A DNA stretch of 64,000 nucleotides from Dimorphilus gyrociliatus (taxonomy: Eukaryota > Animalia > Annelida), in assembly GCA_904063045.1 (NCBI GenBank), contig CAJFCJ010000020.1, forward strand, positions 984,916 to 1,048,915. Direction: 5' to 3'. The position numbers and the translations under genes were made by a program. Under the pieces are notes generated by a model. That model was given only the letters and a program-made list of their open reading frames with translations. It was not told the origin of the DNA and made no database searches. Shown in pieces: positions 1-64,000 of the stretch (positions are counted from its first letter, which is position 1; every line of letters starts with the position of its first letter).

Positions 1-3000
1 AAAACTTATTTGTTAGTATGATTAAGTGAAAATAATCAGACTATCAAGACTAATTTTGTAATCGTTTATTTCATTTCTTAACAACTCTTAACAACGATAT
101 CGATAATCTTCCTATACTTCATCTTCACATGTCATAATCATTTCAATATCTGAGTTTTTAAAGATACAAATATAGGTTATACTTTCTCTTATCGTTTTTG
201 AATAATAGACAAATATCTCTTTCGGTGCTTTACCTTTTATAAAAGTAGCTTATATTAAATTCTGTTTATCCTTTTCTGTACAAAGCAGGAGATCCTCAGA
301 TGGGCAAAAGTTATTGAACTAGATCGGGAATGTTCTAATTTTGGTACTGATTAGTCTTATAAATAATACATAAGTACTGTATATGCTAGAGGCCGTTACT
401 GTAATTGCTCAATTTACAGAATGGATGATATATTGAAAGAAATTCACAATTTCTATATATGAAATCATTTAATTTCGCTCTATTTACATTCTTAAATAAA
501 TCCTTCATTAAAATTATTGTACAGGTTATAGAAACTATTGACGTTGCATACTGTAAGGAGAATGATACTATCGTATATAATTTAAAATATACAGCTACAG
601 TTGGGATATTTATTCATATATAAAGTTAAATACCAAGTCAGATTTAGGATGCTAAGGATTTAAGACGAAATTATCATTTAGGTAAAAAACCAGGATTAAC
701 GTTGGATTTACATTGTAATATAAACATTAATATTCAATGCATATTTCTTCAAGGTTAAATGAACAGGTAAAAAAGAAATTCTTTATTCAGATAAATTGAA
801 TTTTTTTAACCTACACGCTATTATTCATCGATTTTGTAGTTAAAGAAAGAGCCTTCACTCTAAAAGCTATTATACTCTCAAGGCCATAGATTAATATATT
901 TTTTGAAATCTTTAGAAGTATATCAATATATTTTTACAAAAAAAAGGAAGAAATTCTATTTCTAGTTTTCTTTTCTTGACTGTCAACAACAGTATGCTAT
1001 ACATTGAGGTCATTATCAATTATATAATAAAGAATAGATTTAATAAGCTATCATTCTCTTAGAATACTGTTGTAATGCATAAAATAGTAATATGATAAAT
1101 ACATAGCTCCATTCTAGAAATAGAATAACACCTTTTGTGACAAATCACCAGTTCATATTTCTTGAATATATTAAAATCACACCAGAGATAATATATGTTC
1201 AATTCTTCTATTTAAAACAAACCATATTTTTTTAGTTGTAAGGTACTTGAGATATTGCATTTTTTTTTACTTACTTCCTCATATTTCAATCATTTTAACA
1301 GTAAAAATGATAAGTAATAGCACTTTAATCATTTATCTTTTACTAATTTTCGAATTAATATAAAATATTCTATTTATTCATTAATCTTCAAAAAAAACAT
1401 GTAAATCAATTTACATGTGTTTATCCGATAAGCCTTTTTCTCGTCTTAATTAGTTTTATACTAAGTACAAGAGAAAAATCAATCAAAACAATTAGACTTG
1501 CTACAATTTAGTTATTGTTATCAGCTTGAAAAGAACATTTAAACTTTATTGATTAAACTGAGTACTATAATATAATCGTTTGTCTGCCAATGAAAATATA
1601 ATAATCAACGGTCTACTCTACATTATTTCTCTCATTTGATAACACTAGCCTTCGTCTATTCTTTTAAAAGATTAGATAGCAGTATAAAATTTCTATGGTG
1701 AATTTAGAGCAATTTACCCATCACTTTGCCTTAACTCAAGAACGTAATACTAATAATAAATTAGAGAATATTTACAAATAGTAACCCAATATCTATGAAA
1801 CAACTCATTTTGTGGCGTAATACGTGCAAGGGTAAAATTTTAAAGAGACTGCAATATTCCTAGTTGAAAAAGTCTACTCATTATATTGATTATCATGGGA
1901 GTACGTAATTTGAACTGCCTGTCCAAAGTAAAAGAAAGAAAGGTGAATAAGATAGAAAAGAAATAGACGGATAAAAGCGATTAGCTATTCATTTTCCTTC
2001 ACTCAAAAAGTGACATGTTTTTTAAAATGTATCTATTTATTTATTAAACGAATAAAGCTTTAACAATAGAAATAAAATATAAAATATATTAAAACTATGA
2101 AATTAACTAGAAGAAAAAAAATTACTTTTCTTTTGTTTCATTAAGAAAAAAAGTAAATAAACGAAATAGAAAACAAAAACTAAATGAGCAAATTATTTTA
2201 CTAATGAAACTGATAAATCTTAACAAAAAACTCCATAAGATTATAATACTGTCTAACAACAAGGGAAATTAATTCACGTTTTTCGTATTGATTGATTTTT
2301 TTCTCCACCTCTTTTTTTATTACTATTTTTTCCTTTTTCTTTTGTTAATTAATTCACCTTTTCTCTTTTTGTTTCTACATTAAAGTTTTCGAAATTTTGA
2401 TTCTGTTACTGCCGTCAGCTAATCTATATATATATCAAATACATATACTGTATATATGTATATATAAACCTACTTAAGCAAGTAATCTTGTTTTTATTTT
2501 TTTTACTTGTACGAACTTACTCGAAAATAATTGCAGGCCTTGCAAGAGATAAATAGTAAAGAGAAGAAAAGGAGAACGGAAAGTAAAACTATGATAAAGG
2601 TTCTCATCCTCGTCGCTTACGTCATAACTGCATCACTGAATCTCTTCCGTTAGTTTTTTCTGAAAGAAGAAAAGACTAAAAAAATAATCTCTCTTTTTAC
2701 ATTAAAACTCTTAACATATATTTGAAAATTATAAATAATTGAAAGAAAAGCTAAAAGAAAAAAGTTTTTCCCGGCAAGACAAATCTACACTATCCTAAGA
2801 TGCTTGAAGGGCCTGCGTTTGATCGCAAATGACACTTGATTACGGGTCCTTTTTACAGCCCAAACGAATCTTGTAGCTACACTTTAAGGCCTAGTTAGCT
2901 TACAGTCAAGGTGAAGTGAAATGTAATCGATTATCGCGCTTATGAAATATGGAATATTTGTATAAAAAATGATCTCTCTTGCAAGTAGATGGTAAATAAA

Positions 3001-4721: not shown

Positions 4722-7700
4722 TCACTGCTTAGTAGAAGCAGAACAAGAAGACGGCTGTGTTGTTGACATAATTCCGGAAGATGAATATGTGTTATTTGTG
4801 GCTGTGGAAGGAGCCTTCATACTAGGTTGATGAGACAATAAAGAATTGTTTCGATTATAAATAGCCTTCTTCTTCTCTTTGCCCCTTTTACTGTCAAAGT
4901 AGTTAAATTATTATTGCTTTCTCTTTTAACTATAAAGTATCATTAAAACTGTCAAATATAAATTACCATATAAAATACAGCGTAGCAAATACTGATGTCA
5001 CTACAAAAAGACCAATCCCAATGACCATAAACATCCAAACGTTTACTGGTGAATCTGTTAATAAGAGTAACTTGACAGTTAAATTGTTCATTTATTTATT
5101 TCCTGTGTACAAACTTTCTTCTGATTCCGTATCTATGGCATTCTTGCTAAAATTGGAACTTGGCGGACTACAATTAGCAATAGTTCTGTGAAGACTATAC
5201 TGGATAAAATATCCCGGCATACAGGCACATTCATTCGTATCTTTGCAATAAGAATGTTTTACAGTGCAAGGGGGGTTGCACTCCTTTATACCAGGAGGTC
5301 GAGATGCGAACGAACAGCCATCTTTGAAACAAAAGAACATTAAATTATTTATTATTAGCTCAATTAATATATGAAATTTCTTGGTCATGAGTTTAACGAT
5401 ATTATCTATAATAAAATTTCATATATTATATATTTATATGGCAATAACATTACTTCAAAATTTACTTACTGACTACATTATCCCCATGATTAGTCTGGCA
5501 CCAAACTTTTCTTGTATCATTCCTCAACCACGGTGAAGTTCTCCATTTAAATAGCGTACACGTTTGTGCGATGCATTTTCTGCTCTGAACTCTTGAAGTA
5601 GAACAAGGCCTTCCATCTTTCGAAGCGCTTTTTAATACTATTCGACTTCTTGTCTGTACCCCGGCTGTTGACGAAAACAAAAAAGAAAATAATATACTCT
5701 CTTTCCTTTTTGAAATAATATCTTGATGATTTTTCCTTACCAAGATCTTCGTGGGAACATTTTCTGTAGCAGAATCCCCATGATGACCACTCCGAGAGTA
5801 CACAATCCGTAGGGCATGGCTTATAACACTCTCTGTGTTCCTTTTTAATTTTCAATCATGTCTTATAGTTCTTTTATGAAAAAAATAAGCGTTCCTAATA
5901 AACGCTTTTACTATTACTTACTTGTCCCAATCGGAGAAGATTAGGTTTTTTAGGGCAAAAGGCATCGTGTAGAAGCTTTCCATCAGTACTCTCACATCTT
6001 AAATAACGACTTTGCATACCAGAACCACAAGAATCAACCTTTTATCCAAAATTGAATTATTAAGGATAGAAAAATCAAGATATAAAAATAGCTTATAACT
6101 GAAATTAGTCACTAACATCATTTTTACATGAAGTCCAGCTAGACCAAGCCCATCTATGACATTCTGTAAAAGCACATGGCTTTTGCTGAACAAGAGGTGT
6201 TGGACAAGCTCTTCCTAAGTGCTTAGCTTCAAATAGAACTCTTCTTTTTCTAAATTTTTGAGCTATTAGACAAAAAAATCTCATTTTAGGTCATTGAAAT
6301 ATAATATTCTAATATATCTATCTATATATGATATAACTATATATATAATTAGTTAAACAACAATTACCATATCCACAGGTTTTGGAACAATCAGACCATT
6401 CGGACCATTCAGAAACAACGCAATCTAATGGGCACGGAACGTGGCAAGATTGCATAGCTTCTCCTTTTAAGTTTATAGCACCGTACTTTAAACGAAAGCG
6501 AGAAACACGTTAAAGGTTTTATAAATAGGATGATAGCATTTACTAAAAATAACATACTTTAATACATTGAGAATAAGGCACTGATTTCTCTGTTCCTGTT
6601 TTGACACATTCTTTAACTCTAATTTTTTTTCCAATTCCACATTGATGCTTTCCCAAAATGCAAGAACTAAATTCTGACCATTTCCATTTGTAAACGCCAC
6701 AATTGCTAACTTCACAAGGTTCAGTATTTATTCTTTCGCCACAATCACCAAATTTTCCGTGTCTTAATATTGATCTGTGCCTTGTTCTCATTTTTCTGGA
6801 TGAACAAGGCTGGTAGAATTTTTCCAATTAGTACTAAATATATCTCTATATTTTATTATTCAACTCACCGGTAAGCATATAGTCCATTCTGACCACAAAC
6901 TAAGTACACATTCTTCTGGGCAAGCTAAAGTGCATTGCTCTCTGTGTATTGGTACTTCTTCCGGGTCACATTTCGAAGCATCTACTTCTGTTCCATTTAC
7001 ACTGTATATGCATTTAATCTTCCTCGTTTTTGTTCCTTTATTGAATCTACCACATGAATTGCCAACATTTTGGCATTTACTCCAGGGTTCTGGTACCCAA
7101 TTATACACACATTCGGTATAACAAGGCTTTGTTTGATATTCCTTTTTTTGGGAGGTGGGAAATATTAATTAAGTATTAAATTATTAATATAACAAACCCT
7201 AGTCTGATTTTTGGGAATTGGACAGGGTCTTCCGCCCCCAAAATCCTCACTGTCTAAATAACGATATCTTCTTTGATGAGATATACCGCATTTATCGTTC
7301 CGGCAGCTGGACCAAGCCGACCATTCCGACATTATGCAATCGCTAGGACAGTTAATGAAGCACATTTCATCCTCCAAGCCTTTTTAGATTTAATAAAGAT
7401 TGTCAATTTATATTATGTAGTCAGTTATGGTCTTATATAACAATCCTTTTACTCAAAATTCATTTAATTATTATCTAATGTCCTCTATATAAAGTATCAT
7501 ATACCTAAAATGTATTTTATTCAACTAGATGGAGCCACCTAATGTTAATTTTAAGTACTTTTTATAACGTGCCACTTAACATACCAGTTTTACTGCACAT
7601 TATAGACGATGCAGATAATTGGCGAACGTTGTCAATACACTTCAAAGTTCTACTTCTCCTTCCGGAATGACCAACAATACACGATGTTTGTTTAAAGAGC

Positions 7701-10700
7701 GTAAAATATTCTTTTTTATGTAGTTCGTACGGATCTTCTGAAGATGGTTCGCTGTTTTAAGAAGAGATATAAATACAATTTTTAAAGACAATTTCTGATC
7801 ACTTACACAAAGTCACCGAAATCACTACTTTCGCCTTTCGGTTTCTTTGACCATTCTTTTATGCAATTCGACCATAAACCGTGACCTTCAGTGCTAAATG
7901 GCATACATGAACAAGTCTTTGTTTCTTTTAATGCGTAAATTTTCTTGCATTTATCATTTCCGGCTGTAAAATCAAGAAATTTTCGATTACTTTCATTCAT
8001 TCTAAAATTAGTAGCTAGTTAATAAACTGTAATAAATACATTCAAGTTGTCTTCTTCTAACTTTATGGCCACCGCATCTATGAGTGCAGCTACTCCACGT
8101 AGACCAACTGGAAATCCTACGAAAATAATTCAATATATCATTAAAGACAAATTCGATTAGGTTTGAAGTAGTGATACTAACTTGCAATGGTGATAACAAT
8201 GTATAAAACAAGATTCCGTTCTACTTGGAGCTGGCCCTAATTCCTTCTTACAAACTGCATCACTTCTTAATCCTCCAGATCTGCTCTTGCATTCTACTTC
8301 TATGAATGGCGTGTATAGTACTATTAATATAAGCTTTTTCATTTATTACAAGGTTTTACTTACTCCTGGTCCTTAATCCTAATCCACATTTGACGTGTCC
8401 ATGCGGAAAAAGACATTTGGAAAAATCGCTAGTTACCCAACGATAATCCTCGCAATTTGGTACATTCCTACAAACTTGTGTCTCATTCATTACCTTTGAG
8501 CATCTTTTACCGCCCAAAGTAGGTGGTTGGAGAACTATTTTAAATCTGTACTGCAGAGCCAATCGTCCTATAAATAAAACAAATTGCGATCACGAAATGA
8601 GGTACTTGAAAATGTTTACTGTCTCTACTTGATCTGCAAGTCAAACTGCATTTTGTCCACATTGTGAATTTTGACACTAGGCAGTCTTTAGGGCAGGGAA
8701 TAGTACAATTCTGCTGCAAGACTGGCCTCAATTCTTGGACACATAACCTATAGAAAAAATAAAACGACGATATTTAAAAGTAATTGTAAATATTTAGTAC
8801 AAAATATATGAAATAGAGAATGACAGTAACAGTCAACGATTAAGTAATACTGTCATCTAACTGGCTCATTTTTTTTTTAAAAATGTTATAATAAGGCCAA
8901 TCAGTAACTCACTTAAAGTCACTTAAATGCTAAACATTTCGTTAAAATCTAACCTGGCAGCCCCCTTTTCGGTTAACTTCTCATTTAAATCATTTTCACA
9001 ATAAGCATTTCTAGTTTGATAACCTTCTCCGCACAACCTGGTCTTATCGAGAGGTATACACTTTTTCCACTGATTAACCCTCCATCTATAAGTTCTACAT
9101 TTACTTTCGCATTCTTTCTTTTCTTGGAGTAAGTGTGACGGACATTTTTTCCCATTCGCTTTTTTATTGATAAAATATAATATTTCATTAATAGCCTATA
9201 AAAATCTTCATAAATTATTAGCTAACCACTAGAAAAGGATAGTATTTCTCTTGTTCTTTGTCTGAGTGTAGGTCTATAAGAATTGGAACAACTATCGTCG
9301 CATTTAGACCATTCGGACCAATTTGAAAAAACACAGTCATTATTGCAAGGTACTTGGCAAGTAACCGTTGTTGGAGGTGGACTTAATTGGCATCGATCTC
9401 TTGAAATCGCAATAAGCTGTGGATAATAAGGAGTAATCGTAAATAAGAATTAAAAAATTGTGAATGGAAGGGAAGTTGAAACTATAAATTTAGAATTTGT
9501 AATATTAATCCAAAAAGTGGAGTATAAAATTGCCTCTTACCCCCATCGAGTCTACGCATTGTATAGTTCTATTTCTATAACCAAAGCCACACCTTTCTCC
9601 ATGCTCATTGCGATCACTAGCTTTACATTCGTCCTCGAACAAAACTTTCCAACTATAGCACCGAGTGTCCTTACAAGGCCTAGTTTCTATTCTGTGCGGA
9701 CAATTAATGCCCTCCCTTATGACGTTTCTAACCCTTTTCTGATACCCTGTATGAAAGAATTAGATTAAATTGACAATCAATATAGTATACTTTCTCTTAA
9801 TTTTATTAATAGACGTTTTTATTTCAATATCAAATGTAATTAGATTAAATTAGGAGTCAAGACGGTTATTTTTTTTAAGGTTACCTTTAATTAAATTGCA
9901 TTTTATTTATACACAGATGGCGATAGTGTGCAAATATTTAATGTAGTAGGTCAATTGAAAAAAAGGAATTCTAATGTGAAATAAGGTTAACTTACTTGAA
10001 TGTTGTCGGTGGCGAAGTTTTATTCCACAACTGCCCCTGCACGGTCCCCAAGTGGACCAAGATGATAGTATACAATCATCTATGCACTCTACTTTGCATA
10101 ATTTGACATGAACTGGTTCAATACTTTTGCAAGATTTCTTCAGTACAGGATGCTCGTCAGAAGCTCGAACGCATAAGATAGAACGAGTTTGTAGACCATT
10201 GCCGCAGCGATCAGTTGGTAGTATTAACTGACATTTAGACCAAGCACCGGATATCCATTTATACCTGAAACGTTACATTATTTATCACTTCATTCTACAA
10301 GATTAAAATATCCGGAACTTACTTTCCACATCCATCTGTTATATCTTCATCCGTAATTAAACGTTTTTGCTCTAATTTTCCACACTTTTTCTTACCGCTT
10401 CCCATCTCAAGTATTGACCTTTTCCTAAAAAAGTGATCGCGTGTTTCGGCAATAAACCAACTCGACCAAGACGATAAATGGCAATCGTTATCTAAGTGGC
10501 AGTATTTTGATGATCTTATTTCCCTATGATTTGAACAGTGGCTGAAGAATAAAACATACAATATTAATGTATTAATATAACATTATATAAGCGTATACGT
10601 GTAAGTATCATATATCATTTCGCATAAGCCATGTAAGAGATAATTCAACGTTTAATGCTAAAGTATCAAATATAATGAATAAAGGATATTTAAATATATT

Positions 10701-13700
10701 TTCGAAGTAATCCTATAAACTATTAAAAAATCATTTTTATCTCCAATAAAGTCGACATTATCTGTTCAACTAATCTAGTATTCATTTCAGTAAAATAAAG
10801 ACTTATTTTCAGTATCAAAAAGGAAATAGGAATAATATGAATAATTAGTTAGCTAGTATTGTTAGTTTAAGCGTCTATATCGTCGCAAGTCAACAAATTC
10901 CAACTGTTTTGCTAGACAAGCTCTCTTCATATATAACATATATTGATTAGCGATTATAATGACCAGGATATAAAAAAAAAGTATTCGAGGAATCTATTTC
11001 ATATACCAGTCTGTACTCGCAAAAAATAAACACCCACGCTAATCTCTTTTGAAAAAATCCATCCTCTTTCACTCCCTTCTCTTCTCTTTCGTATATTTTT
11101 GTCTCTCTATCCCTTTTTTTATTATTATTATTATGTAATTTCTTTTCTTTTCCTTTAATCAATTATTTTCACTGTTCGTTTCTTTACAAATAATTTAGTA
11201 AAAAAAAAAAGCTCCTGTTACATTCATGAATATGTCATCCCTTTTTTTAATGTTTTTTTTTTGTCCTATCTTTGCTATTCTTACTTTATTTAGTACCTTA
11301 CACAACAATAACTAGAATATTCAAAGTCATAGACTCCTATCTTTAACAAAAAATTTATTCCTCCCACCTATTTCCACCCACTCCTCCCTCTTTTCTTTTT
11401 ACTGTTAAAAAAAAGAAAAACAGAAAAAAATTTCTTTTTTTTTTAATTCAATTGTAGCAATTTTCTTTCTTTTCAAATGCGATCGCAAGCATGTTTTATA
11501 CATGTTTATAGGCTTAAACTTTAGAAAAAAACTATCCAATTTGGTGAGGATTTAATTTAAAGGGTATATTAATATTTTATAATGTAAGATGTTTGCACTA
11601 AATAAAGATTGAATGAATGGCTTTTTATAAAAATTTTATAATAAATTGATAAAATGAGTGGGAGGAGAGTAAAAACCATAGTATACATTAATAAGAAAAA
11701 AAGATCTTTAATAAGTAAAAAAACCCTTTTCCAAATATGAGTATTGCATAAAAACAAATCTTTGTAAGGAACGATCGATTATTGATTAAGAAATATTGGT
11801 ATTTGAAATCAATATAATTCCTAGAATACTAATGAAAATTACAACTCTTGCTATGTTCGTTCTTCCTACTTTTTTATCTTAAACTCTAAATAATTTAGCT
11901 ACTTTAAATAAAAAAAAAATGTTGGTTTGACCAGACCAATCGATTTATCTGAACTTTTTACATTTGATAAATTGAAGCTATATGGATTTTTTTACCAGTC
12001 CAACAGTACGAGAATTTAATTAACTTTAATTGAATCAAATTAAACATCAAATGGGTTCTTTAGTTAAACCAATTTGATTTGAAAACCATATGAAAACCAT
12101 TTAAAACCACTAGATCTCTCTCAAATTTAATTGCTTACGAAATAACTAAAAATTCATAATTCTTCAAGATATTTGCCAAAAAATTGAAGTAAGCATATAA
12201 TTGATTTAATTATCCCTCTTTTGGAGATAAATTCTATCAGTCTCTCAATACATCAAAGGACATCCAATCTCCAAAGGTTTAAATAGAAATATGAAATATG
12301 TTAGAAAAAATGTCCGAAAACTGGCACTGCATCTGAAAATTTAAACCCGAACCATCATCGAAGGGCGTAAAGTATAGGTTTCAATATAATTTAAGGCAGG
12401 GAATAACCTTCTGCTAAAGCTTATAACCGCCTCTAATTTTTATACTCGAATGTATTCTTATTAGCACTACTAATCTACGTATATAAAAATTTCGATAAAG
12501 TTTTTTTAGTACTTTTTTAAATATATTTCGAGAATAAGTCTTTGTTTCATTTTTTTTGTAATATTCCTTTAATTTAGATTCTAGCTTCCTTTAATAATAA
12601 ACTAAAAATATATATTGAAAAGATGAGCTCTATTTTTAGCTGTGCACTCGATAACGACAAAAAAAGCACGTGACCACTTTTTTTTTCTCTTTAAGGTGTT
12701 GTATCTATATTTCAGAACATTAGTCTCACCTACGAAACTTTCCTAGTGCCTAGTAAAAAGACAAGTAATAGACTATCGGATTTCTTATTCTTTCATATTT
12801 CTACTTATCTCTATGTCGCTGTATCTATACTCCTTTGTCTTTGTCTATACTCTACTCCTACCCCATTTCTCTGTCACTCATTCTTTTGCCTTTCTCTCTC
12901 TACTCTCTTTTATCAGCTTTCTTTTTCCGCTATTGTTCATTCCCTCTCTTTCCTTTGTTTATCACTTATATATACTTCTTTGCTTAACAAAAGAAAAAAA
13001 TGAGTTGACAGATGCAGAGAAAATTATATTTTTTATACTCTTTTGCGAGTTTGATCAACGCCGATCATACCCTTGACCAATTGACCATTAGCGTGTTTCG
13101 AGTATACTCGAGACTATTCGAATTCATTGAAGCTTAGAAATCTTTCGGTCATCGGTCTAAGAGCGTTCCTATTATGCTATTGATGTACAAATTGAATTCG
13201 TTGATATATATGGCGCCCGTGGCGTTTCCGTTAGCGTGTAATATTGCTTTTAAGCTCATTGTTCAAACACAATTCATTATTGACTGCTAATTGAATACGA
13301 CATGCAATCAACTCATCAATCTCAAACTTACCCAATATCGACCTTCGAACCGGTATAATCAATACATTCATAACTTCTCGTCTGCTGACCAAAATTCTTA
13401 TTGCCGATTTGCTTACATTCACTCCACTCTCCGTATCGATACTTGTAGTTCATCATTGTAACTGATTTTGAATAGTTAAAACATCTTTTCGTTTCCTCCA
13501 GTGTTGGACAATCTTTACCTCCAAACTTTGGTTCGACCAAGACTACTCTCCATCTCGTTATATTTTTAAGTAAACTTGTATCATAGACATCACACTTAGA
13601 CCAATTACCAAACTCTGATACTACGCAATCAGTGGGACATTCATTTCTACAAAGTCTCGTAAGTTTAGGTTTCTTGTAAAATTTCGTACATATTTCTTCA

Positions 13701-16700
13701 GGTACATGAGATTTTTGGCACTTTAACCTGCATTGAGCAGTTCTGGTTTGACGAAAACTTTTACACTCTGTCGAACGACAATCAGACCACTCGGATGTTT
13801 GCCAATAAAGAAGGGGTTCCAACTCTGAGCATATTTTAAAGCAGGACTTTTGAGAAACGGGTTGAAGTTTTTTATTGCAATTTTGGTTATTACACCAGAC
13901 TTTTCTTGTGCGTATCCCTCCCGAACCACATCTCACACCCTTGCAATCGGACCAGGGACCTGTCGAGTATACGTATGTTAATTAATTGGCCTGTCGGTTG
14001 TAATTTAACGCCTACTCTACAAGTCACATTAAATCTAGTCATATCGTATGGGGTAAATTGCTGACTTTTTACGGACTGTCTAAGTTAATTTAGCCGTTGA
14101 ATTCGACTGCCTTTGACATATTATAAGGAGTAAAGGAAGGGGCTAAGTATCAATTTTTACACTAAAGTCAAAAAGGGGCAAATACATAGTATTTTACTTA
14201 GTGGCGAAACTTTTCAGCAATTCTATTTAGGAGAATTTTAAGTCAACACTTGCTTTTTTTTCAAACTTAAATCATTAAAATTAGGAAGAAAACCTAATTT
14301 AAACGATATAAATGAAGAATTATTACACTAGTATCTGATTCTTGAAAGTGAAAAAAAAGATCTTTAAATATTCATAATATACTATACACTATATATTAAA
14401 ACACTTGTTTTAAATGAAAATCGATTTTCGACAAATATGATTGACTGTTGATCGAGTTCACTTGCAGTAATCTATAATTCTTTTTTTTTATTTCAATTTT
14501 TTTTTATTATTCTTTATTATACTTTTTTTCCAATTATGACAAGCAGACGCTTTTACATTCGAATAAGCGGATTCCTTTCAATTAAAGAAAAGAACTTTAT
14601 CGATAGGTGGCGTGTAAATACCCGAAAAGAGTAACATCTAAACACATCCTTAATTAGGAGGACGGTAGAAACAAATTTGCAACTAATTTGCACATCAATT
14701 AAGTGGAACACGCGAACTAGAGCAAAGTCTTGGTCAGTAGCATCATCATTTAGACTGATAATCCTTTATATCATTTATTAATATAATTAATTTAAGACAA
14801 AAAATTTTCCCTATTAAAATGATATTATATTATATAGTTAGAAAGATAAGTTTGACAAGACGGGAAAGAATTGCACTGCCGCTTTTCCCCTTGCTATCTT
14901 ACTTTTGATTTCTCACGAGAAGAGCTTATGGAAAAAGGATTTTTGTCCAAATGCTTTTTGCGGTTGACAATAGCCTTTGCTGTGCGGAATTGGCCTCAAA
15001 TATTCGCCATCAACCACTGAATTAGGAAATTTTCCGGAGAGTGAAAATTTTTTTTGCAGGTGGCTAATACAGTACACATATACCGATTTATCGATCCGTC
15101 TTACAAGTTGCGGATCGATTGGAGAAAAATTTCCAGCGGGTGACAAAACAATTGCAAGTGCGAACAGAGAGTGGGGAACCGATTGGATAGAGAAAGAATG
15201 ACCATGGGGAGGGAATGTTGTAATATTAGACCAAACACCTGAAGCAATTTAATATCTGTGTTTTGCGCGTATTAGGTACTTAAAGTGGACAGAACGGACG
15301 GAAGGGGAACGAAAGAGATGAGATTAATGGGTAAGGAAACGACGTGAGAAAAAAAAAGCAGCTTGGTTTTAATAGAGTTGTAAGATTTCTAATGGAGGGC
15401 AAACAATGATGGTAGAAACATCTCACTCGTCGGGACTCATCAATATAGCTATACACGGTTGATATCAATGCGTGAATAGGGAGACAATTAAATTGACTCG
15501 AATAGAGTGAAATTGTCACCATTCTTAAAAACTACTTAAAAGAAAAATTAAGCAAAGAAATGAAAGGGTTGATAAGACACAATCCAGATGTCAGAATCCG
15601 TCAGTGTAAATATACTAAAGATATTAGTTAGAGAAAATAAACGAAAATTAAATTAGACAGAAAATGTTGCAGTAGCATTTTTGCAGTCCTGCTTGAGGCT
15701 AGAAATCAACACTGAAAAAGTCTGTAATACGATTTAACGGTTCGTCGGACTATATACAAATAGATTAACCTAGTAAAAAATGTCCTCGCTTTCAATCAGG
15801 ACACTATGAATTCGTGGGGGAACTGACAAACTGGTCACTTCAATCTATTTATAAAGTGGCGCCACGATTATAATGGTGGCAGAAGGCGACGCTTCGCGCA
15901 TAAAACAGTCATTTTTTATACTTGATTAATACAAGTGCTACAAATAGAACCAATTTTTACATGGACAAACTGTCTCATCTAAAGCGACAACATATTTATC
16001 ATTTATCTTTTGGTCTTGTACAAATTAATTCCTAATTAACTTATTAGTAATTCTGATACGTACAAAATAGGTAATCAGAGATATTTTAGATGGTTTTATC
16101 CTTTTAACTTGTTTATTTTTCCCTCTTACCCAATTTCCAAGTCGTTTTTTTACTTGATTAATACGAGCAGTGAGATAAACATGACTGTACTGCAAAATAG
16201 ACCCATAGAGATGTCCCTTACGCTTATTTAGTTATAGACGAGAATATAGAACATTTTAATATAAAAAATATATAGTTATATATCAATATATACTTTATGT
16301 ATCAGAGATATATAGATGCAACTACATAGAAGAGCTTAAAGACATCTATTGTATAGCGTATACGCAATTTCTTCTGTTGCAGTTTACATCTATATCAGTA
16401 TATTCAGTTTAAATGTCTTTTGTAAGACTAAAATTAATTAGTTGTTCGTTCAGTTGATTGATACACTATATGAGATATCCAATAGGTCCGAGTTTAATAC
16501 GACTTAAGCCTATTTAAATCATCAAATTAGTTACGTATCCTCTTATATTTAAATATATATATATATATATATAAGTCTGCCTTTTAGTACTGCTAAAATA
16601 GAATACTTATATCATTATTATTGTAATTTTCACTCAACTAAGAAAATATAACTAATATTTTCATAATTGATTATTTGAAGGGCTAGACAGTATCTTTTTT

Positions 16701-33613: not shown

Positions 33614-36130
33614 TTAATCAGTTTGTTCAATATAAAATCTAGACGAGGAGTAAGGATAGTGCTGATTTCGTAATAACTGTACATCTTCCCTAACAGAACT
33701 GACTTGTTTAGTGAAACTATTTAAAGCTCTTGCCTGTTCCTCACTCCTTAGAGCCCATTCCAACCTTTCTTTTTCTAATTCTTCAATTTTTTTCCTGAAT
33801 TCCTCATTCTCATCAGCTAATTTGCAACACTTGTCATCCCTCTTCCCCATTTCAATTTGTAATTTATCAACCGAACTCTGGAGTTGAGAGTGAGCTGACA
33901 CCACCTGATTTAATTGAGTAGCTAGTTGTTTTCTCTCTCTGTGAGAGACGTCTAAAGCTTCTTTCCAGCCTAATTCGGCAACCCGACTTTTTTCATTTAA
34001 GCTATTTGCTTTTTCTTTCATTTTTTTCAACTCGTACAGAGATTCGTCTCGAGATTTAACAGCTTCTTGAAAATCTCTTTCCTTTCTATTACATGACTCT
34101 CTAACAAGTTCCAGCTCGTTACGTAAGCGATTTTCGTCGGCTTTAACCAGATCGTAATCTCTTTCAGTTTTTGTCAACGAGTCTTTCAAATCGTCTACTA
34201 ATTCCCTTAATTTAACAGCTTCAGCCTTTGCAGATCCTTAACAAGAGCAGAATTGAAAAGAAAATAATTATTCTTTCTGAATTTCAGCAGAAAATACGTA
34301 CCACTATCTTCAAGTTCTCTCTGTAAATCATCTACTCTAGACTCGAGGCGACCTTTATCATAAGAGAGCCGTTGTTTTTGTTCCGTTAAATTAGCTAAAG
34401 TTCGTTCCAATTGCTGCTGAGCCCTTCCATGTTGCATAGAACTAGCTATTCTTTCTCTTAATTGTCCTATTTCTATTCTGTATTCGTCTCTTTCCTTTTC
34501 AACTTTCTTCAATTCTTCAACAAGTTCATCCAATTGACTTTCAACATTTTTCCGCTCTTCCACTACATTGTCTAAAGCATCATTAACTTCATCCAGTAGA
34601 TTATCTTTTTCCTTTAAAGCAGCTGCCTGTTCAGCCCTTAGTAATTCAATTTCTTGATTCCTCTCGTTTAAAACAGCTTGGCACTCTTCAAGTTTTCTCC
34701 TGAGTTCACATTTAGATCTTGCTTCTAAAGTTAGTTGTTTTTTTAAGGCCTCTTCATTATTTGAAACTTGGCTGAGGGCTCTAAATATGACATCATAGTG
34801 ATAAAATATATATTAAATAAAACACGTTCAAACAAAACCTTGCTTTGTCAGCGCTTTCCTCACACTCTGCAAGTAATTTAGCATTATGGGCAGCCGCTTC
34901 TTTCAAAGCTTCTCGAAGTTGTTCATCTCTAACCATAGATACAGCACCGGCTTTTTGAGCTTTTTCTAACTTTTCCATTAAACTAGAATAGTCTATTCTC
35001 ATTTTTTCCAACTCTTTAATAGTCTTGTCGCGCTGTCCGTCGGTAATCTCGAATTTCCTTTGAAATTCATCTAAGATAAAAAGTAAATTTAAAGATGTAT
35101 ATCTGTTAAAAAGTAAACATGTTGAAAGATAAACACCTCTTTCAGCTTTGATGGCCTTTAGTGTGTTTTCCGTGACAGTTCTCCTTTGTCTCTCGGTCGA
35201 TGCTTCATGTTGTATTTGAATCATTTCCTTTTTTAGACTAGAGCAACTAGCTGTTAAACTGGACAGATTGTCTCTTTCTGAAGAGGAAAAGCATTCCATT
35301 TCTTGTAACCTCTTCTGTGAACTTCTGTGAGCCTCCTCTAAACTTTTTCTAACGCTTATTTCTCTACTCAACTCAGCTCTAAGCTCATCAATTCTCCTTT
35401 GTAATTTTATTTTTATGGCATCATTGTTTGAAATCAATAACTTGGCACTCTCAACTTCATTTTCTGCTTTGTTCAACTTCCTTTTAAGAACAACAATATC
35501 TCTTTGTAAATTGGCAACCTCTTTTTCATAAGCATCAGCCGCTTGTGAGAATTTTTCCACTTTTCTCTTCTTAAAGGCACTTTTTTCTGATCTTTTTTGA
35601 ATAACAAAATCAATAGCTATTTTCTATCATTATTTAATTAAGAAAACCAGTACTTATTTGATAAACTTGAACAATCAATACTTTTCATTTTATTGAACGA
35701 TTAATCAGTAGAAGTGATCAATAAAATCAGCTTTAGACTGTTATTATATAAGAAAATTTATTTTTACCTTAATTGATCTAAAGAGGATCTTAGCGTTCTG
35801 ATTGCACTTTCGCTTTTACAAACTCTCTCAACAATCGAAGGATCTGTTTGCTCAGAATTCACTGTCATTGAAGCCACAGCAGCTGCTATATCTTGAGTAT
35901 CTTTTTCAGCAACTTTTAAATGTTTCTGAATTTCGCTTAGAGCTTTTTCTTCGGGATCTTCAACCTTCTAAAGCAAGTATAAACATGCATTTTTCCGATA
36001 ACAAGTCAATTATTAAAAACAAACTATACATTAAATTAAACTGTCTGATCTAAAAACGAACTATTGTTGCACTAACCATTTCAGTACTGAACGATACGTT
36101 TTTCACCAATTTGTTTGATGATGAAAACAT
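33614..36130 (-). CDS. CCDC150: Coiled-coil domain-containing protein 150-like, 6 exons, ~680 aa
   Basis: Exons 36077-36130, 35768-35967, 35137-35591, 34839-35070, 34302-34780, 33614-34236 join in frame (2043 nt). Motifs IVERVCKSESAIRTLRSSL, IDELRAELSREISVRKSLEE, RLSYDKGRLESRV and QVVSAHSQLQSSVDKLQIEMGKRD align in order with remembered human CCDC150 ([73 protein letters not shown]). Confidence 0.8.
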
Positions 36131-43216: not shown

Positions 43217-47799
<4,583 letters not shown>

Positions 47800-48278
47800 C
47801 ATTGATTTTTATGATTTTATTAATTTCTAGTAATAGAAAAGCCGAGAAAAAATGATTTAAAAAATGAATTTAATAATCCTATTTGAAAAAAATAAAAGAA
47901 AAATATTCAAATAAAGAGCAATAATGTTCATTTGGGAAAAAAAACTCAAAAAAACCCTGGAAAGTAGTCAAAAAAAGGTTTTGTCATCCGTTAAATCCCT
48001 AGTCGTCTCACGTAGATGAATATATCAACTATAAATCGCTTGAATTAACGTCCTTTTCTGAAGACTCCTTTCTTTACAGGAAAAAGACAAAAGAGAGACT
48101 TTGAAAGTATTTTCTTTAATTTGGAAGAAATTATCGTAAAAATTCTCGTCTTTTTTTTTCAATTAAGAAGGTCATTAATATTTTAACGCAATAATATGTA
48201 GGATGCTTGGTTAGGTATATAATTAAGATTTTAAGAAAACAAGAACGACAGAATGTTTACAGAAAAGAATCTAATCAA

Positions 48279-49462
48279 TTAATATCCTCCATAATACGGT
48301 GTACGGAAACGTTTAAAGAAAGGGACTCGGTCGTAGGAATCAGTATCCGCTCCGTAAATCGATTGTTTTCGGTAGAAAGCATTGGGCCTAAATAAGGAAC
48401 CGTAATAATCTTGATTTTTATCGTACTCGTAGTAACCTCCTCCGTAGTTAATAAACCTGAAAAACATAAAAATCCCTTATAAGTAAAAAAAAAAAAAATT
48501 CCAAACTAGATTTCTTTCATGTTGTCTCTTTTACAAAAATGTTTTGGTCACGCGATTTTTGATCCGTCCACTTCCCCTTGAGTTGATCATTGTTCAGCGA
48601 CTATTACCTTTAATTTAACCTTTATTTTTATCAATTTCTAGAGGCGGTAATTGTGTTTAATCAATTGGGAGGGGGAGGAGGAATGTATTTCTATTTCGGC
48701 TTTAAAATTACTACGAAAGAGTAATTTTCATTGGTCAATATGAATTGGAAAGTTAAAGGGAGAAAGAGAATATGAGTAGTAGTACAAAGAATTCTTTTCC
48801 CTCTAAATAAAGAGTCTAACCAAGAAACCGATTTAAAAAGAGTGTGAAAATGACAGCATAGATTGTATTTATCGTAAAGACGTTTATATATAACACTTAG
48901 ATTTATTTATATAAATGTATTTGTTTATAAAAGCTATTGTAAGTCTATTATAAACCCTTTATTTTATTGTTTCCCAAATAGAATGATACGAATTCTAATT
49001 ACCAGTTTAGGCTGTCATCTTAACATTTTATTTACATTACTAAGAAAACACTAAAAACAATTCAACAAAAGCATTTTTTTTTGTTTCTTTAAAAAAAAAT
49101 AATCATTTTTCAACAAATTAAAGAAAACCATAGTGGGTATCATGTATTCAGACATTTAAGATTCGTAGTCTATTTTCTAATTAAAATGCATAATATAATA
49201 TATCTAAATAATGTAAAAAGGAAAAAGAAAACATCACAACACTCCTATTAAACTATATGAAAGTAATGTAGAATTTAAAAGTTCAGTTTTATTAGATTTA
49301 TTTCTTTATAAATTATCTATTTAACTATCTTACAAAAAAAACAAACCAGTAAGAAAGTAATTAAAAGAGGGATATTTAATGTAACTTTTCAAGCACTTAC
49401 CTTGATTGCGTAAATACAACTGTCAAAACGAGTAGGATTATAATAACCGAAGTTTTAGACAT
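48279..49462 (-). CDS. Small secreted Tyr/Gly-rich peptide precursor (79 aa, 2 coding exons)
   Basis: Exon 1 49401-49462 MSKTSVIIILLVLTVVFTQS + AG|GTAAGT; exon 2 48279-48456 after TTTTTCAG, phase 2 match, giving R-FINYGGGYYEYDKNQDYYGSLFRPNAFY-RK-QSIYGADTDSYDRVPFF-KR-FRTPYYGGY*. Confidence 0.85.
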
Positions 49463-49577
49463 CGTCCAAAGTGACTGTGACAGTTTCGCGCCTTTGACTC
49501 GAAATGAAATAGACGCCTGTGTAGCCTGGTACCTGACTCTATCGTCCGCCTTCTCTCTCTCTTGTACTCGAACTTTT

Positions 49578-49586
49578 CTTTAAATA
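49578..49586 (-). promoter_or_regulatory. TATA-like box (TATTTAAAG) for the secreted peptide gene
   Basis: About 115 nt upstream of the ATG at 49462 on the same strand, ahead of a GC-richer leader. Confidence 0.4.
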
Positions 49587-50373
49587 CTTTTCTATTTCTT
49601 TTTATTAATTAATATAATTAGATGTCAAGTTGTTTATCATTTAATTAAGTACCAGGTTTACTTACGTCTTTAGCCTATTTCCTATTCCCTTTTTTATCGC
49701 TAAACAAACATTTTCTGTCGCCTACGTATCACACTCAGCAAAACTTCTAAGATGCAAAGGTATCATCGCCCTCTAGTGCCCATTATACTAACTAGTTAAT
49801 CAGGTCTTGTGTAAGCGGAGAGTCGGCTATCGAACATTAACCATCATGTGTAATTTATATTAATGAATAGAGAGACTGTTTAGATCCTAACGCATTACTT
49901 TTAACAATTTCAATAGAAAAGAAAATATAAATATATTTATATATATTAAAGTAAAAAGAGATGCCATTAGATGAAACTTTCTATCTAATTAAGGACATTT
50001 AATTGAACCTTTTAAATAAACTTTGATAAATTGAAAATAGTATATACGTGAGAATAACAGTTAATTTATTAAACAAAAACATACGGTAAAGCGTTAACGT
50101 TTATGGATTATGCACAGGTCAATTATTTTCGGTCGATTTCTATGTATACTGTGTCCAGGACAACCGAAACAATAAAAATATATGTGCGTACAGTCGAGGC
50201 GTCTACGGCGTTTTTTTTTGTTTATTATCTATATATTTAACCAGGCGTGCTTAATTTTCTAGCGCCACTCACAATCTGGCCGATGAATTGATTAGTATAG
50301 CTCTAAAACTAGAAAAAAAACTTCATTAGCACTTTTTTTTTTCGAACGATATCTGCTTTGGATTTTTGTACTA

Positions 50374-51463
50374 ATGGAACATAAAGTACTGACTATTAGC
50401 GTTCAGAAAAAAGATGAAACTAATAGTGGAATAGGAGGAGGAGGAGGAGGAGAAGGAGGAAAAGGAGGTTCAAGCATTCAAGAAAGAAGAATGAAAGGTA
50501 AATTCCATGGTATTGCTTTAAGAATTCTTGCCAAAGTTATGGCAGGAGAGAAGCTTGACGTAGAGGAAGAGAAGGAAGAAAAACGGAAGATAACTTCCTC
50601 GTCACAAGTACGTGTATTGTCTAGCTTCTTAATAAATTAATTATTATATAAAAGGGAGAATCTATCTTTAGAATAGGAAACGCGTCTGAGTACTTAATTT
50701 AAAGACTAAAATATAACTAATGTAATGTGTCAACAGATCTTATAAATAAGTACTTCTAAGTAGCATTTTTATAATTAAACGCATCGCTCTGCAAAACATT
50801 CAAGTTAATGTAGTATATTAATATAAAATTGCTATTCATTTATATAAGTATATATAGTATATAGCAGTAAACAGATATACAAATATATAAAAACTATAGA
50901 CAAGATAATTAAATATTTATTTGTTTTATTATGTTTTATATGAAAAAAACCTTTTTAAATTATAGAAAATTGAGAATATTTCACCGAAATCGCCAAAAAC
51001 TCCAAAAACACCTCTTACACCAAAACGAACTGAGTCCAGAAAACAATTATATAGACGTAAAGGCGTAGATTTTCGTAATGTTGTACGATTAGCAAGTATG
51101 AAACACTTCAATAGAGTTTTAGGTACAACAACAGAAAAAAATGAAGTACTTGAAGAGGATAGCCTGCCGAAGTTGCCTCCAAGACCTCGTTTTTCAGCCA
51201 CTTTATCACCGGAAGCTCAATTAGTTACTTTAATGTGTTATGAGGAGGCGATCAGTGAGAAATTATCAACAACTAATAATCAACCTAAGAATGAGAAAAG
51301 ATTATTAAATAAAAGATCAAGCATTGACGATCAGAGGAGACTTTTAGTCTCTTCAAGAGTAGAAAGAGCAATGAGTTTACTTGATATAGCTAAAAAAGAG
51401 GATACTAAAGTACTCAGACATTTTAAATCATGGACTTTGGCATGGAGTAAAGATTTCGAATAA
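50374..51463 (+). CDS. Uncharacterised protein, 2 exons (50374-50607, 50966-51463), 243 aa
   Basis: CAA|GTACGT donor and TTATAG| acceptor join in phase 0 (78 codons + 166 codons including the stop). Gly-rich N-terminus, SPKSPKTPKTPLTPKR cluster, and a structured-looking C-terminal block PRFSATLSPEAQLVTLMCYEE..RVERAMSLLD..FKSWTLAWSKDFE*. Confidence 0.75.
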
Positions 51464-61849: not shown

Positions 61850-62587
61850 AAGCGAAATATATAAGAAAGCCTTTCTAATAAAATATTATGATGAAATATT
61901 TTGAAAGGTATGCGAATTGTTCAAATATTTTTTAAGGAGGATAATTGTCCCTATATTGATTAGTCACGTAATACAAAAGTAATCATTAAGGTTAATATTT
62001 TTAAAAGGTTATGTTTATTCAATTTTGTATAAATAAAAAATATAAATATGCTATAAAACAAGTGAAGTATGGAATATTTCTATCGTTTGTCTATAGATAT
62101 ATATATATTTGTAAATGCGCGCGTGTGTGTGTCTGTGTGTGTTTATAATATGCTTGAAGGAATGCCAGTAAAAAAAAATCAATAATCAAACACTACAAAA
62201 TAAGAATGACTTTGGTAAATAAACATTTATTAAAGTGTAACGAAAATTGAAGAAATTATCATCTAGTTACAAATGATTATACATACACTTTGACCTTTTT
62301 ATTACGTTATTTTATTATATCTGGAAATAAAAGGGTTAACCAAATTTGGCCAAAATTTAGATAGGCCATTAGCTTAGAGATTTCAATGCTGTGCATACCA
62401 CACTAAGATTGAATACTTTCGATATTTTCTATGGTAGTACCTGTTACGGGCTTGTTTTCTCTTCTCAGCTAATAAAAAATTTTATATTGGATATCTTTTA
62501 TATTTCGTCGTTTTAACTTCTTATCGACGAGCGGATGATTATAAAAAACATTGGATATTTCTTATTGAAAATTCGTTAAAGACTAAA

Positions 62588-64000
62588 ATGAATCAACTTG
62601 AAATATCAGTTGGTTTATTATTACTAATAATAGCCACACCTACCTTTTCTAATGAATGTTTTTGTGATGGAACATCGTGTGTCTGTAGAAACTTGAAATT
62701 AACTACAATACCTTTAAATTTGAACGAAAATATTGAAGTTTTGTTTATTATCGGCAATCCTATAAGTACTCTTCCAGATGCTGCATTTTCTAGATATAGT
62801 AAATTAAAAATCTTAATTTTAAAGGATAATCAACTATCCGATATAAAAGATGGAGCTTTTAACGGACTAGATGATCTAATTGAACTGTCGTTAGAGGGAA
62901 ATTTCCCTTTAGAGTCTTTTAGAAGTGAGTGGTTTTATCCTGTAAGAAATTTAAAGAAGCTCACACTATCTTCCAATCCTTTAGTACAAAAATTACCAAG
63001 TAATTTCTTAAAAGATCTAAAATTAGATAGTTTAAATGTTCGTCGATGTAATTTATTAAAAGTTGACAAAGGTATTTTCGCTGAGAATACAACAATAAAA
63101 ACATTGGATTTAAGGCATAATAGAATTGAACGCTTTGAAGACGGCTCTCTCGACCATCTAAAGATGAATTTATCTAATTTGAATCTTGGCTTTAATTCAC
63201 TTAATAAACAAGAGTCTTGGGAAGCTTTTGGAGGAATTCACTTCAATGAATTTAAAATAGACATGAATAATTTACGTAATCTGGATCCATTTAAATACGT
63301 TTCTGCCAAAACGGTTGATTTAGCCAATAATGATCTATCAAATGTAACCTTTGAAGACTTTCCGAATTTTATATCAATAACCCATCTTTTATTGAAAAAT
63401 ACAAGTATTAATTTAAACTATGGATCATTTCGAAATATGCCAAATTTAGTTCATCTAAATTTAGCATCAAATTTGATCGATTATTTGCATTATAGACAAT
63501 TCGAAAATAATGGTAAACTGGATTATTTGGACATTTCAAATAATAAATTAACTGCTTGGAGTTCAGTACACGCAAATTATGCACCAAATATTACCGATCT
63601 TAACCTTCAAGGGAATTTAATTGAAATTTTAGATGGATACGATTTTAATCCTTATTTGCAATTGCAAAGGTTAAACCTGAAAAGTAACCTAATAAAAACA
63701 ATACTGCCAAATACTAAGAGTATATTTGAGAGACTACGAAGCTATAATCTAAATGATAAGATTCTGTTAACGAATAATCCAATTCATTGTAACTGTGAAA
63801 TTAAGTGGCTTGCCGAGTATTCTAATGAAAATGTAGCCTTGAGTGAATTTGATAGTCCAATATGCGCATCTCCCGATTCTCTTAAAAATAAAAAACTTTA
63901 TGGGGACTTTAAGGACAATAATATTGATCAGCTAAGATGCAGTACAGCAAGTATTGACTTTATAGCCAATTCAACTTATACCGTTCAGGAAGGGAATGAA
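62588..64000 (+). CDS. Extracellular leucine-rich-repeat protein, probably LRR-Ig receptor; intronless so far, truncated by the window end
   Basis: Open frame of 471 codons with no stop (hence absent from the ORF track): signal peptide MNQLEISVGLLLLIIATPTFS, LRRNT ECFCDGTSCVC, about 13 LxxLxLxxN repeats, LRRCT NNPIHCNCEIKWL..PICASP..L, then CSTASIDFIANSTYTVQEGNE, which looks like the start of an Ig domain. Confidence 0.95.
   Translation, partial: MNQLEISVGLLLLIIATPTFSNECFCDGTSCVCRNLKLTTIPLNLNENIEVLFIIGNPISTLPDAAFSRYSKLKILILKDNQLSDIKDGAFNGLDDLIELSLEGNFPLESFRSEWFYPVRNLKKLTLSSNPLVQKLPSNFLKDLKLDSLNVRRCNLLKVDKGIFAENTTIKTLDLRHNRIERFEDGSLDHLKMNLSNLNLGFNSLNKQESWEAFGGIHFNEFKIDMNNLRNLDPFKYVSAKTVDLANNDLSNVTFEDFPNFISITHLLLKNTSINLNYGSFRNMPNLVHLNLASNLIDYLHYRQFENNGKLDYLDISNNKLTAWSSVHANYAPNITDLNLQGNLIEILDGYDFNPYLQLQRLNLKSNLIKTILPNTKSIFERLRSYNLNDKILLTNNPIHCNCEIKWLAEYSNENVALSEFDSPICASPDSLKNKKLYGDFKDNNIDQLRCSTASIDFIANSTYTVQEGNE

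What the first reader, a model, noticed from the sequence alone, without database searches (positions are those of the whole stretch)
48279..49462. Novel-looking secreted Tyr/Gly-rich peptide precursor (79 aa)
Seen: signal-peptide exon (absent from the ORF track) with GTAAGT donor, phase-matched second exon and upstream TATA-like box. The mature region has 12 Tyr in 59 aa with a recurring (Y)YG motif (NYGGGYY, DYYGS, SIYGA, PYYGGY). RK and KR sites would release RFINYGGGYYEYDKNQDYYGSLFRPNAFY, QSIYGADTDSYDRVPFF and FRTPYYGGY. Known: dibasic convertase sites, N-terminal Gln (pyroGlu) and Tyr among acidic residues (sulfation) typify neuropeptides; Tyr/Gly-rich small secreted proteins also occur as DOPA adhesives, cuticle cross-linkers and antimicrobials. 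I do not recognise it as any described family and there is no amidation Gly. Inference: an undescribed neuropeptide/hormone or a glandular adhesive peptide.
Basis: partly seen in the sequence, partly recalled or inferred. Interest (0 to 1): 0.75.

Follow-up and report, generated by a model that had tools for sequence, protein, structure and literature searches.

The report
Orphan secreted tyrosine-rich worm peptide gene
A small two-exon gene in the miniature marine worm Dimorphilus gyrociliatus very probably encodes a secreted, floppy, tyrosine/glycine-rich 7-kDa peptide with no detectable relatives; it looks more like a sticky or protective secretion than a classical neuropeptide, but where it is expressed could not be tested.

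Summary
On the minus strand there is a 62-nt signal-peptide exon (49462-49401) with a GTAAGT donor, a 944-nt AT-rich intron, a pyrimidine-rich CAG acceptor and a phase-matched 178-nt exon (48456-48279). Together they give a 79-aa precursor with 12 Tyr, one RK and one KR.

It is more than chance:
- Signal-peptide-like mini-exons with a consensus donor occur twice in the 64 kb and in none of 60 shuffles.
- Exon 2 has the highest Tyr+Gly content of about 470 similar-sized open frames.
- Its codon use resembles actin and tubulin genes.
- In the only database relative, an unspliced frame from a diverged strain, identity is 57/58 in the exon and 40% just upstream of the acceptor.

The gene is single-copy. 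It is absent from public protein sets and from the published neuropeptide list, and has no homologue among 1.84 billion representative proteins.

It lacks amidation glycines and repeated peptides, is 31% aromatic and is predicted to be disordered. I favour a secreted material or surface peptide (0.4) over a neuropeptide (0.25) or an antimicrobial peptide. No tyrosinase gene was detected, which argues against DOPA chemistry.

The parts
49580..49586 (-). TATA-like box TATTTAA, 124 nt upstream of the start codon (putative core promoter)
   Evidence: This is position only; no CAGE or RNA data were tested.
49463..49555 (-). Inferred 5' UTR of about 90 nt. It has no upstream ATG, is locally GC-richer, and has A at -3 of the start codon.
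   Evidence: The transcription start is inferred from the TATA position and has not been shown.
49401..49462 (-). Exon 1 coding part, MSKTSVIIILLVLTVVFTQS plus AG. It is a signal peptide with n-region MSK, a 14-residue hydrophobic core, and T/S at -3/-1. It is followed by the GTAAGT donor.
48457..49400 (-). Phase-2 intron, 944 nt, GC 0.26. It runs from GTAAGT to a T-rich tract ending in CAG.
   Evidence: Conservation against P0001 collapses upstream of the acceptor.
48279..48456 (-). Exon 2 coding part, comprising the last base of the Arg codon, 58 codons (FINYGGGYYEYD...FRTPYYGGY) and a TAA stop. GC is 0.39. It holds RK at residues 29-30 and KR at 48-49 in exon-2 numbering.
   Evidence: It is 57/58 identical to P0001.
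48115..48120 (-). ATTAAA, a candidate polyadenylation signal 158 nt after the stop codon
   Evidence: This is a motif match only.

Best explanation
This is a real, single-copy, lineage-restricted ('orphan') protein-coding gene of Dimorphilus gyrociliatus, convergent with the glycerol kinase gene.

The product is a 79-aa precursor whose 20-residue signal peptide is removed on entry into the secretory pathway. That leaves a mature peptide of about 7 kDa that is basic-zwitterionic (pI about 8.9) and intrinsically disordered. Roughly every third residue is aromatic (12 Tyr, 6 Phe), interspersed with Gly, Arg/Lys and Asp.

I infer that it is exported largely intact from a gland or epidermal cell. 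It would act as an extracellular 'sticker' material in mucus, adhesive, cocoon or surface coat. Cohesion would come from Tyr/Phe pi-pi, cation-pi and hydrogen bonding, possibly hardened by peroxidase-made dityrosine links or modified by Tyr sulfation. Tyrosinase-made DOPA is unlikely.

Shown here: the gene anatomy, its non-random nature, the coding-type conservation and the orphan status.
Inferred: secretion, the intact mature form, the tissue and the material role.
For: Gene signals:
- The signal-peptide exon, consensus donor and acceptor, matching phase, TATA-like box and ATTAAA are all present.
- Such a signal-peptide exon is absent from 60 shuffles.

Coding character:
- Exon 2 is a composition outlier among open frames of similar size.
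- Its codon use is like actin and tubulin genes, and TAC is preferred (P = 0.005).

Conservation: P0001, from a diverged strain, is 57/58 identical in exon 2 but only 10/25 identical in the codons just upstream of the acceptor, with frame shifts there.

Uniqueness:
- No paralogue and no repeat copy in the genome.
- No Pfam, Rfam or ESM Atlas match.
- No homologue by word search or by exhaustive phmmer over 1.84 billion representatives.

Physical character:
- pI 8.87, GRAVY -1.07, 31% aromatic, aromatic residues spaced 1-7 residues apart.
- AlphaFold gives pLDDT 55, pTM 0.11 and no secondary structure.

Against a classical neuropeptide: no Gly-dibasic site and no repeated peptide, whereas most short-peptide precursors in the part of the species' list I read have G-KR/G-RR amidation sites.

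Enzyme context: haem peroxidases are present in at least 4 loci and Sulfotransfer_3 domains are abundant.

Known small Tyr/Gly-rich secreted material proteins include the tubeworm Pc-1/Pc-2 and mussel fp-3, whose zwitterionic variant coacervates with itself (PMC4275877).
Against:
- The spliced 79-aa product is not present in the protein collections searched. Only an unspliced frame is.
- The 944-nt intron is long for a genome whose median intron is 66 bp (PMC7854359).
- Known annelid cement proteins are highly repetitive and rely on DOPA. This peptide is not repetitive, and no tyrosinase domain was detected.
- Six acidic residues and two dibasic sites would also fit a processed prohormone.
- The function rests on composition alone.
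Confidence: 0.4

Rival explanations
1. It is the precursor of a lineage-specific, non-amidated neuropeptide or hormone. After signal-peptide removal, prohormone convertase would cut at KR and perhaps RK, and carboxypeptidase would trim the basic residues. The products would be FRTPYYGGY, QSIYGADTDSYDRVPFF (N-terminal pyroGlu, with possible Tyr sulfation at DSYD) and a 29-mer. These would act on a receptor.
For: - The precursor is small, with a signal peptide and two dibasic sites.
- Gln follows RK.
- The Tyr at position 41 has 3 acidic neighbours.
- Sulfotransfer_3 family genes are present.
- Other agents' unchecked notes report several small neuropeptide genes of this genome that are missing from the annotation.
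- Nematode Gly/Tyr-rich NLP peptides can act as signalling peptides (NLP-24 abstract, PMC4427864).
Against: - There is no amidation Gly and no repeated or paralogous peptide copies.
- RK is a poor convertase site (my own knowledge).
- The three predicted products share only a loose YG motif.
- 31% aromatic content is unlike any precursor in the part I read of the species' published list.
- It is absent from that list.
- No homologue exists in any other animal, whereas most of this worm's neuropeptides belong to families named after counterparts in other animals.
- The insect Tyr-rich 'neuropeptide-like' NPLP4 is itself doubted as a true neuropeptide (PMC4237046).
Confidence: 0.25
2. It is a secreted host-defence (antimicrobial or antifungal) peptide of the extended Gly/aromatic-rich type. 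It would be released by the epidermis or gut, intact or cut at KR.
For: - It is basic, Gly- and aromatic-rich, small, secreted and disordered.
- Nematode NLP/CNC peptides (YGGYG/YGGWG motifs) and the annelid lumbricins are aromatic-rich defence peptides (PMC6780910).
- Being orphan and fast-evolving is typical of immune effectors.
Against: - Net charge is only about +2 to +3, with 6 acidic residues.
- There is no amphipathic or Cys-stabilised design.
- There are no exact YGGYG repeats and no homology to any AMP family.
- It is single-copy, whereas such effectors usually form clusters.
Confidence: 0.12
3. It is not a functional gene. Either a chance or decaying open frame happens to lie downstream of a signal-peptide-like ATG exon, or it is a very young, untranslated de novo ORF.
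For: - There is no transcript evidence.
- It is not in the public gene set.
- Open frames of about 60 codons are common in this AT-rich DNA: 472 of 40-85 codons in the window.
- The intron is long.
Against: - The combination of signals is not seen in shuffles.
- Codon bias and composition are outliers.
- Conservation is 57/58 in the exon, against 40% with frame shifts immediately upstream in a diverged strain.
Confidence: 0.13

Closest known systems
Mussel foot protein 3 (fp-3, including the zwitterionic Mfp-3S) and tubeworm cement proteins Pc-1/Pc-2
   Same: All are secreted, small or low-complexity, basic, Tyr/Gly-rich and disordered. Mfp-3S is zwitterionic and coacervates with itself (PMC4275877). 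From my own memory, fp-3 is about 5-7 kDa and carries YGG-type motifs. That is a lead only, as I did not align the two.
   Different: No sequence homology was detected. Pc proteins are highly repetitive, and both groups depend on Tyr-to-DOPA conversion by tyrosinase. This peptide is non-repetitive, richer in Phe and Asp, and the genome shows no tyrosinase domain.
Nematode NLP-24..33 and caenacin (CNC) Gly/aromatic-rich peptides
   Same: All have a signal peptide and short, basic, Gly- and Tyr-rich peptides. They were first filed as 'neuropeptide-like' and later linked to defence, and in some cases to signalling (PMC6780910; PMC4427864 and PMC11112505).
   Different: Those are multigene families built from repeated YGGYG/YGGWG units. 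Here there is a single gene with only loose YG motifs (YGGGYY, YYGGY), many acidic residues and no homology.
Insect neuropeptide-like precursor 4 (NPLP4)
   Same: From my own memory it is a small secreted precursor giving a Tyr/Gly/Ser-rich, non-amidated peptide with N-terminal pGlu, found by peptidomics. Its status as a receptor ligand is doubted (PMC4237046).
Published D. gyrociliatus neuropeptide precursors (Supplementary Data of PMC7854359)
   Same: They share the signal peptide, small size and dibasic sites.
   Different: Among the listed precursors that I read (part 1 of 2), most short-peptide entries carry repeated peptides and/or G-KR/G-RR amidation sites, others (hormones, insulins, allatostatin C) are Cys-rich, and many are named after families known in other animals. 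This gene has none of these features and is not in the list.

Membership tests
Neuropeptide / prohormone precursors | N-terminal signal peptide | tested here: met
   MSK, then a 14-residue hydrophobic core, then TQS. It passes a heuristic n/h/c-region and -3/-1 test that no shuffle passes together with a consensus donor. SignalP itself was not available.
Neuropeptide / prohormone precursors | Convertase sites flanking the bioactive peptides | tested here: inconclusive
   One KR and one RK are present. Cleavage is unknown. Both sites are conserved in P0001, but so is everything else.
Neuropeptide / prohormone precursors | Amidation Gly before basic sites, or repeated or conserved peptide copies | tested here: not met
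   There is no G-K/R and no internal repeat. There is no paralogue and no homologue.
Neuropeptide / prohormone precursors | Neuronal or endocrine expression and detected mature peptides | not testable with these tools
DOPA-type adhesive proteins (mussel fp-3/fp-5, tubeworm Pc-1/Pc-2) | Secreted, basic, Tyr/Gly-rich low-complexity protein | tested here: met
   Y 21%, G 12%, pI 8.87. Disordered model.
DOPA-type adhesive proteins (mussel fp-3/fp-5, tubeworm Pc-1/Pc-2) | Tyr hydroxylated to DOPA by a tyrosinase | tested here: not met
   PF00264 has no match in the own genome at E<=0.001. The same six-frame search finds PF03098 and PF13469 easily. Caveat: the control genomes did not ring either, so absence is likely but not proven.
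DOPA-type adhesive proteins (mussel fp-3/fp-5, tubeworm Pc-1/Pc-2) | Highly repetitive primary structure (Pc proteins), or homology to fp or Pc proteins | tested here: not met
   Only loose YG motifs. No homologue other than P0001 in the exhaustive search.
Nematode NLP/CNC YGGYG peptides | Repeated YGGYG/YGGWG units in a multigene, infection-induced family | tested here: not met
   No YGGYG or YGGWG motif. Single copy. No homology. Induction is not testable.

The most novel reading that the evidence does not exclude
This miniature annelid, in whose genome no tyrosinase was detected, makes a mussel-fp-3-like 7-kDa Tyr/Gly-rich secretory peptide that provides DOPA-independent wet adhesion or cocoon and mucus cohesion. 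Cohesion would come from aromatic and cation-pi stickers, possibly with dityrosine or sulfotyrosine. Alternatively, the same precursor yields an orphan sulfated, non-amidated signalling peptide (pQSIYGADTDSY(SO3)DRVPFF).
Probability: 0.3. Interest if true: 0.5.

Novelty: new member of a known kind. Interest (0 to 1): 0.3.

Why it matters
It adds an unannotated, apparently selected orphan gene to a compact model annelid genome. Small secreted genes of this kind escape both the annotation and motif-based neuropeptide mining.

If the product is a gland material, it would be a minimal, non-repetitive peptide that may not rely on DOPA. That would make it an easily synthesised model for aromatic 'sticker' cohesion.

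If it is a hormone, it would be a rare non-amidated, possibly sulfated, lineage-specific peptide.

Either way it is one ordinary-sized piece of lineage-specific biology, not a new kind of system.

Tried and rejected
- Pfam scan of exon 2: no family at E<=10.
- Word-index protein search: only P0001, an unspliced 91-aa frame from Logan assemblies.
- Exhaustive phmmer over 1.84 billion representatives: only P0001.
- ESM Atlas, all clusters and named clusters: best score 0.80 with recognition 1200, which is uninformative.
- Paralogue hunt in the own genome by protein, by the YYGGY codon pattern and by DNA. It returned only the locus itself. The five other YYGGY sites are unrelated contexts and fall below the control count.
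- Rfam on 47500-50500: nothing. An RNA gene is therefore rejected.
- Published neuropeptide list and other supplements: no match to four motifs.
- The opioid-like YGGF/YGGxx idea is rejected, because no predicted product begins with YGG (NLP-24 abstract).
- Lumbricin-type annelid AMP is rejected for lack of any homology.
- Antisense artefact of the glycerol kinase gene is rejected. That gene's last exon ends with a stop near 47640, about 480 nt short of the candidate poly(A) signal of this gene.
All searches used exon 2 by reference. Exon 1 (20 codons) was only translated and scored locally.

Full report
**Where we are.** The window is G000 contig C20:984916-1048915 of a 77.9-Mb, 349-contig, roughly 30% GC animal genome. 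Earlier notes of the scan name it Dimorphilus gyrociliatus. That fits the published assembly of about 350 scaffolds for a 73.8-Mb genome (PMC7854359). I take the species as very likely but not formally proven here.

**The observation.** On the minus strand:
- Bases 49462-49401 read ATG...MSKTSVIIILLVLTVVFTQS plus AG and are followed by GTAAGT.
- After a 944-nt intron of GC 0.26, the sequence ...ttttatgtttttcag|G opens a frame that runs to TAA at 48281-48279.
- That frame encodes FINYGGGYYEYDKNQDYYGSLFRPNAFYRKQSIYGADTDSYDRVPFFKRFRTPYYGGY.
- The split codon is AGG (Arg), so the precursor is 79 aa.
- TATTTAA lies 124 nt before the ATG, the stretch between holds no ATG, and A sits at -3.
- ATTAAA lies 158 nt after the stop.

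**Is it more than chance?** Open frames of this length are common in such AT-rich DNA, with 472 frames of 40-85 codons in the window. Length alone therefore means nothing. Four other things do carry weight.
- An ATG mini-exon with a positively charged n-region, a hydrophobic core of at least 10 residues, small residues at -3/-1 and a GTRAGT donor occurs only twice in 128 kb of both strands. It occurs in none of 60 first-order shuffles. With any GT as donor the shuffles give a mean of 0.27.
- Exon 2 has the highest Tyr+Gly fraction of all comparable frames, 0.33 against a maximum of 0.26.
- Its codon log-odds, trained on actin and tubulin genes of the same genome against chance frames, exceeds 99.2% of those frames. 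Tyr is coded 8:4 by TAC:TAT, where chance frames have 27.5% TAC; P = 0.005.
- The only related protein in the public collections, P0001, is a 91-aa frame called on unspliced Logan contigs. It is 57/58 identical over exon 2, with one Val to Ile change. In the 25 codons just upstream of the acceptor it is only 10/25 identical, and four of those ten are the MFFR that overlies the acceptor. The remainder aligns only through frame shifts.

P0001 therefore comes from a noticeably diverged lineage, and conservation switches on exactly at the predicted splice acceptor. I read this as purifying selection on a coding exon.

**Context.**
- The gene is convergent with a glycerol kinase gene on the plus strand. 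Its exons run from about 43.7 to 47.6 kb, and the last exon...[24 protein letters not shown], stops near 47640.
- On the other side, the next clear open frame is on the plus strand at 51.1 kb.
- The locus is unique in the genome.
- No Rfam family matches it.

**Relatives.**
- No Pfam family matches at E<=10.
- There is no paralogue by protein, by the YYGGY codon pattern or by DNA.
- The word-index search found only P0001.
- The exhaustive phmmer search of 1.84 billion representatives found only P0001.
- The ESM Atlas gave nothing usable.
- The protein is not in the published neuropeptide precursor list or the other supplements of the genome paper.
- It is evidently not in the public proteome, since no NCBI or UniRef entry surfaced.

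As the operators required, the joined 79-aa protein was not typed, searched or looked up. Everything was done with exon 2 by reference. Whether the spliced product exists verbatim in a database is therefore untested.

**Properties.** For the exon-2 part: 7.06 kDa, pI 8.87, GRAVY -1.07, 31% aromatic (12 Tyr, 6 Phe), 7 Gly, 8 basic and 6 acidic residues, with aromatic residues every 1-7 positions. AlphaFold without an alignment gives pLDDT 55, pTM 0.11 and no secondary structure. This agrees with disorder but is weak evidence.

**What it most likely does.** Nothing here measures function, so the argument rests on design.

Against a classical neuropeptide:
- No Gly precedes a basic site.
- There are no repeated copies.
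- Only KR is a strong convertase site. RK is rarely used (my own knowledge of convertase site rules).
- The fragments share only a loose YG motif.
- Most short-peptide precursors I read in part 1 of 2 of the species' own list are built from repeated G-KR/G-RR units, and the remainder (hormones, insulins, allatostatin C) are Cys-rich.
- Most of this worm's neuropeptides belong to families named after counterparts in other animals, whereas this gene is an orphan.

For a material or surface role:
- A composition rich in Tyr, Gly and Arg, small size, a zwitterionic-basic charge and disorder are the hallmarks of mussel fp-3 and tubeworm Pc-1/Pc-2. One fp-3 variant coacervates with itself (PMC4275877).
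- Those proteins, however, use DOPA made by tyrosinase. No tyrosinase domain is detectable in this genome, although the same search finds haem peroxidases at four or more loci and 34 Sulfotransfer_3 matches.
- If the peptide is a material, its chemistry is therefore more likely plain aromatic and cation-pi cohesion, dityrosine or sulfotyrosine.

Other readings:
- A defence-peptide reading (nematode NLP/CNC and the annelid lumbricins; PMC6780910) is possible. It is weakened by six acidic residues, single-copy status and the lack of YGGYG repeats.
- The history of Tyr/Gly-rich 'neuropeptide-like' proteins is a caution both ways. NLP-24 signals through a receptor (PMC4427864). Insect NPLP4 is doubted as a neuropeptide (PMC4237046).

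**Odds.**
- That this is a real, selected protein-coding gene for a secreted peptide: about 0.85.
- By function: secreted material or surface peptide 0.40, neuropeptide or hormone 0.25, defence peptide 0.12, not functional 0.13, something else for the remainder.

**Verdict.** This is a new, unannotated, orphan member of the loose class of small secreted Tyr/Gly-rich peptides. It is of moderate-to-low general interest until expression data exist. Those data are public (RNA-seq and CAGE of PMC7854359) and would settle the gene model in an afternoon.

Noticed in passing
window 2521-2607 (-): This is the only other signal-peptide-like ATG mini-exon with a GTRAGT donor in the window. It reads MRTFIIVLLSVLLFFSLLFISCKACNYFR, is 87 nt long and in phase 0. 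It is probably the first exon of another secreted or membrane protein gene running towards lower coordinates.
   Followed up: no
window about 5000-14000 (-): A series of Cys-rich exons with thrombospondin type-1-repeat-like motifs (WSxWS...C...C), for example the frame at 13328-13936. This looks like a large extracellular-matrix protein gene.
   Followed up: no
window 33614-35560 (-): Long, charged heptad-like frames rich in E, K, R, L and Q, suggesting a coiled-coil protein gene.
   Followed up: no
window about 43700-47640 (+): A glycerol kinase gene made of many short exons. Recognisable stretches include [21 protein letters not shown]...[45 protein letters not shown] and [12 protein letters not shown]. 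The last exon ends near 47640, and the gene is convergent with the finding.
   Followed up: partly
window 62437-64000 (+): An open frame of 521 codons that runs off the end of the window. The ORF listing does not list it for that reason. It is probably a large exon of a gene continuing beyond the window.
   Followed up: no
whole genome G000: There is no tyrosinase (PF00264) match anywhere in the assembly. There are 34 Sulfotransfer_3 matches, including a tandem group at C2:3.47-3.49 Mb. This suggests a possible loss of tyrosinase and an expansion of sulfotransferases in this worm.
   Followed up: no
L017 (G000:C21:510760-510774, -): The C-terminal end of a frame reads ...DYNDYSQGYNTGDMGNYGNGQYGDGQYDYYGGYGANY*. 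This is a Gly/Tyr-rich tail of the kind seen in RNA-binding proteins and is unrelated to the finding.
   Followed up: no
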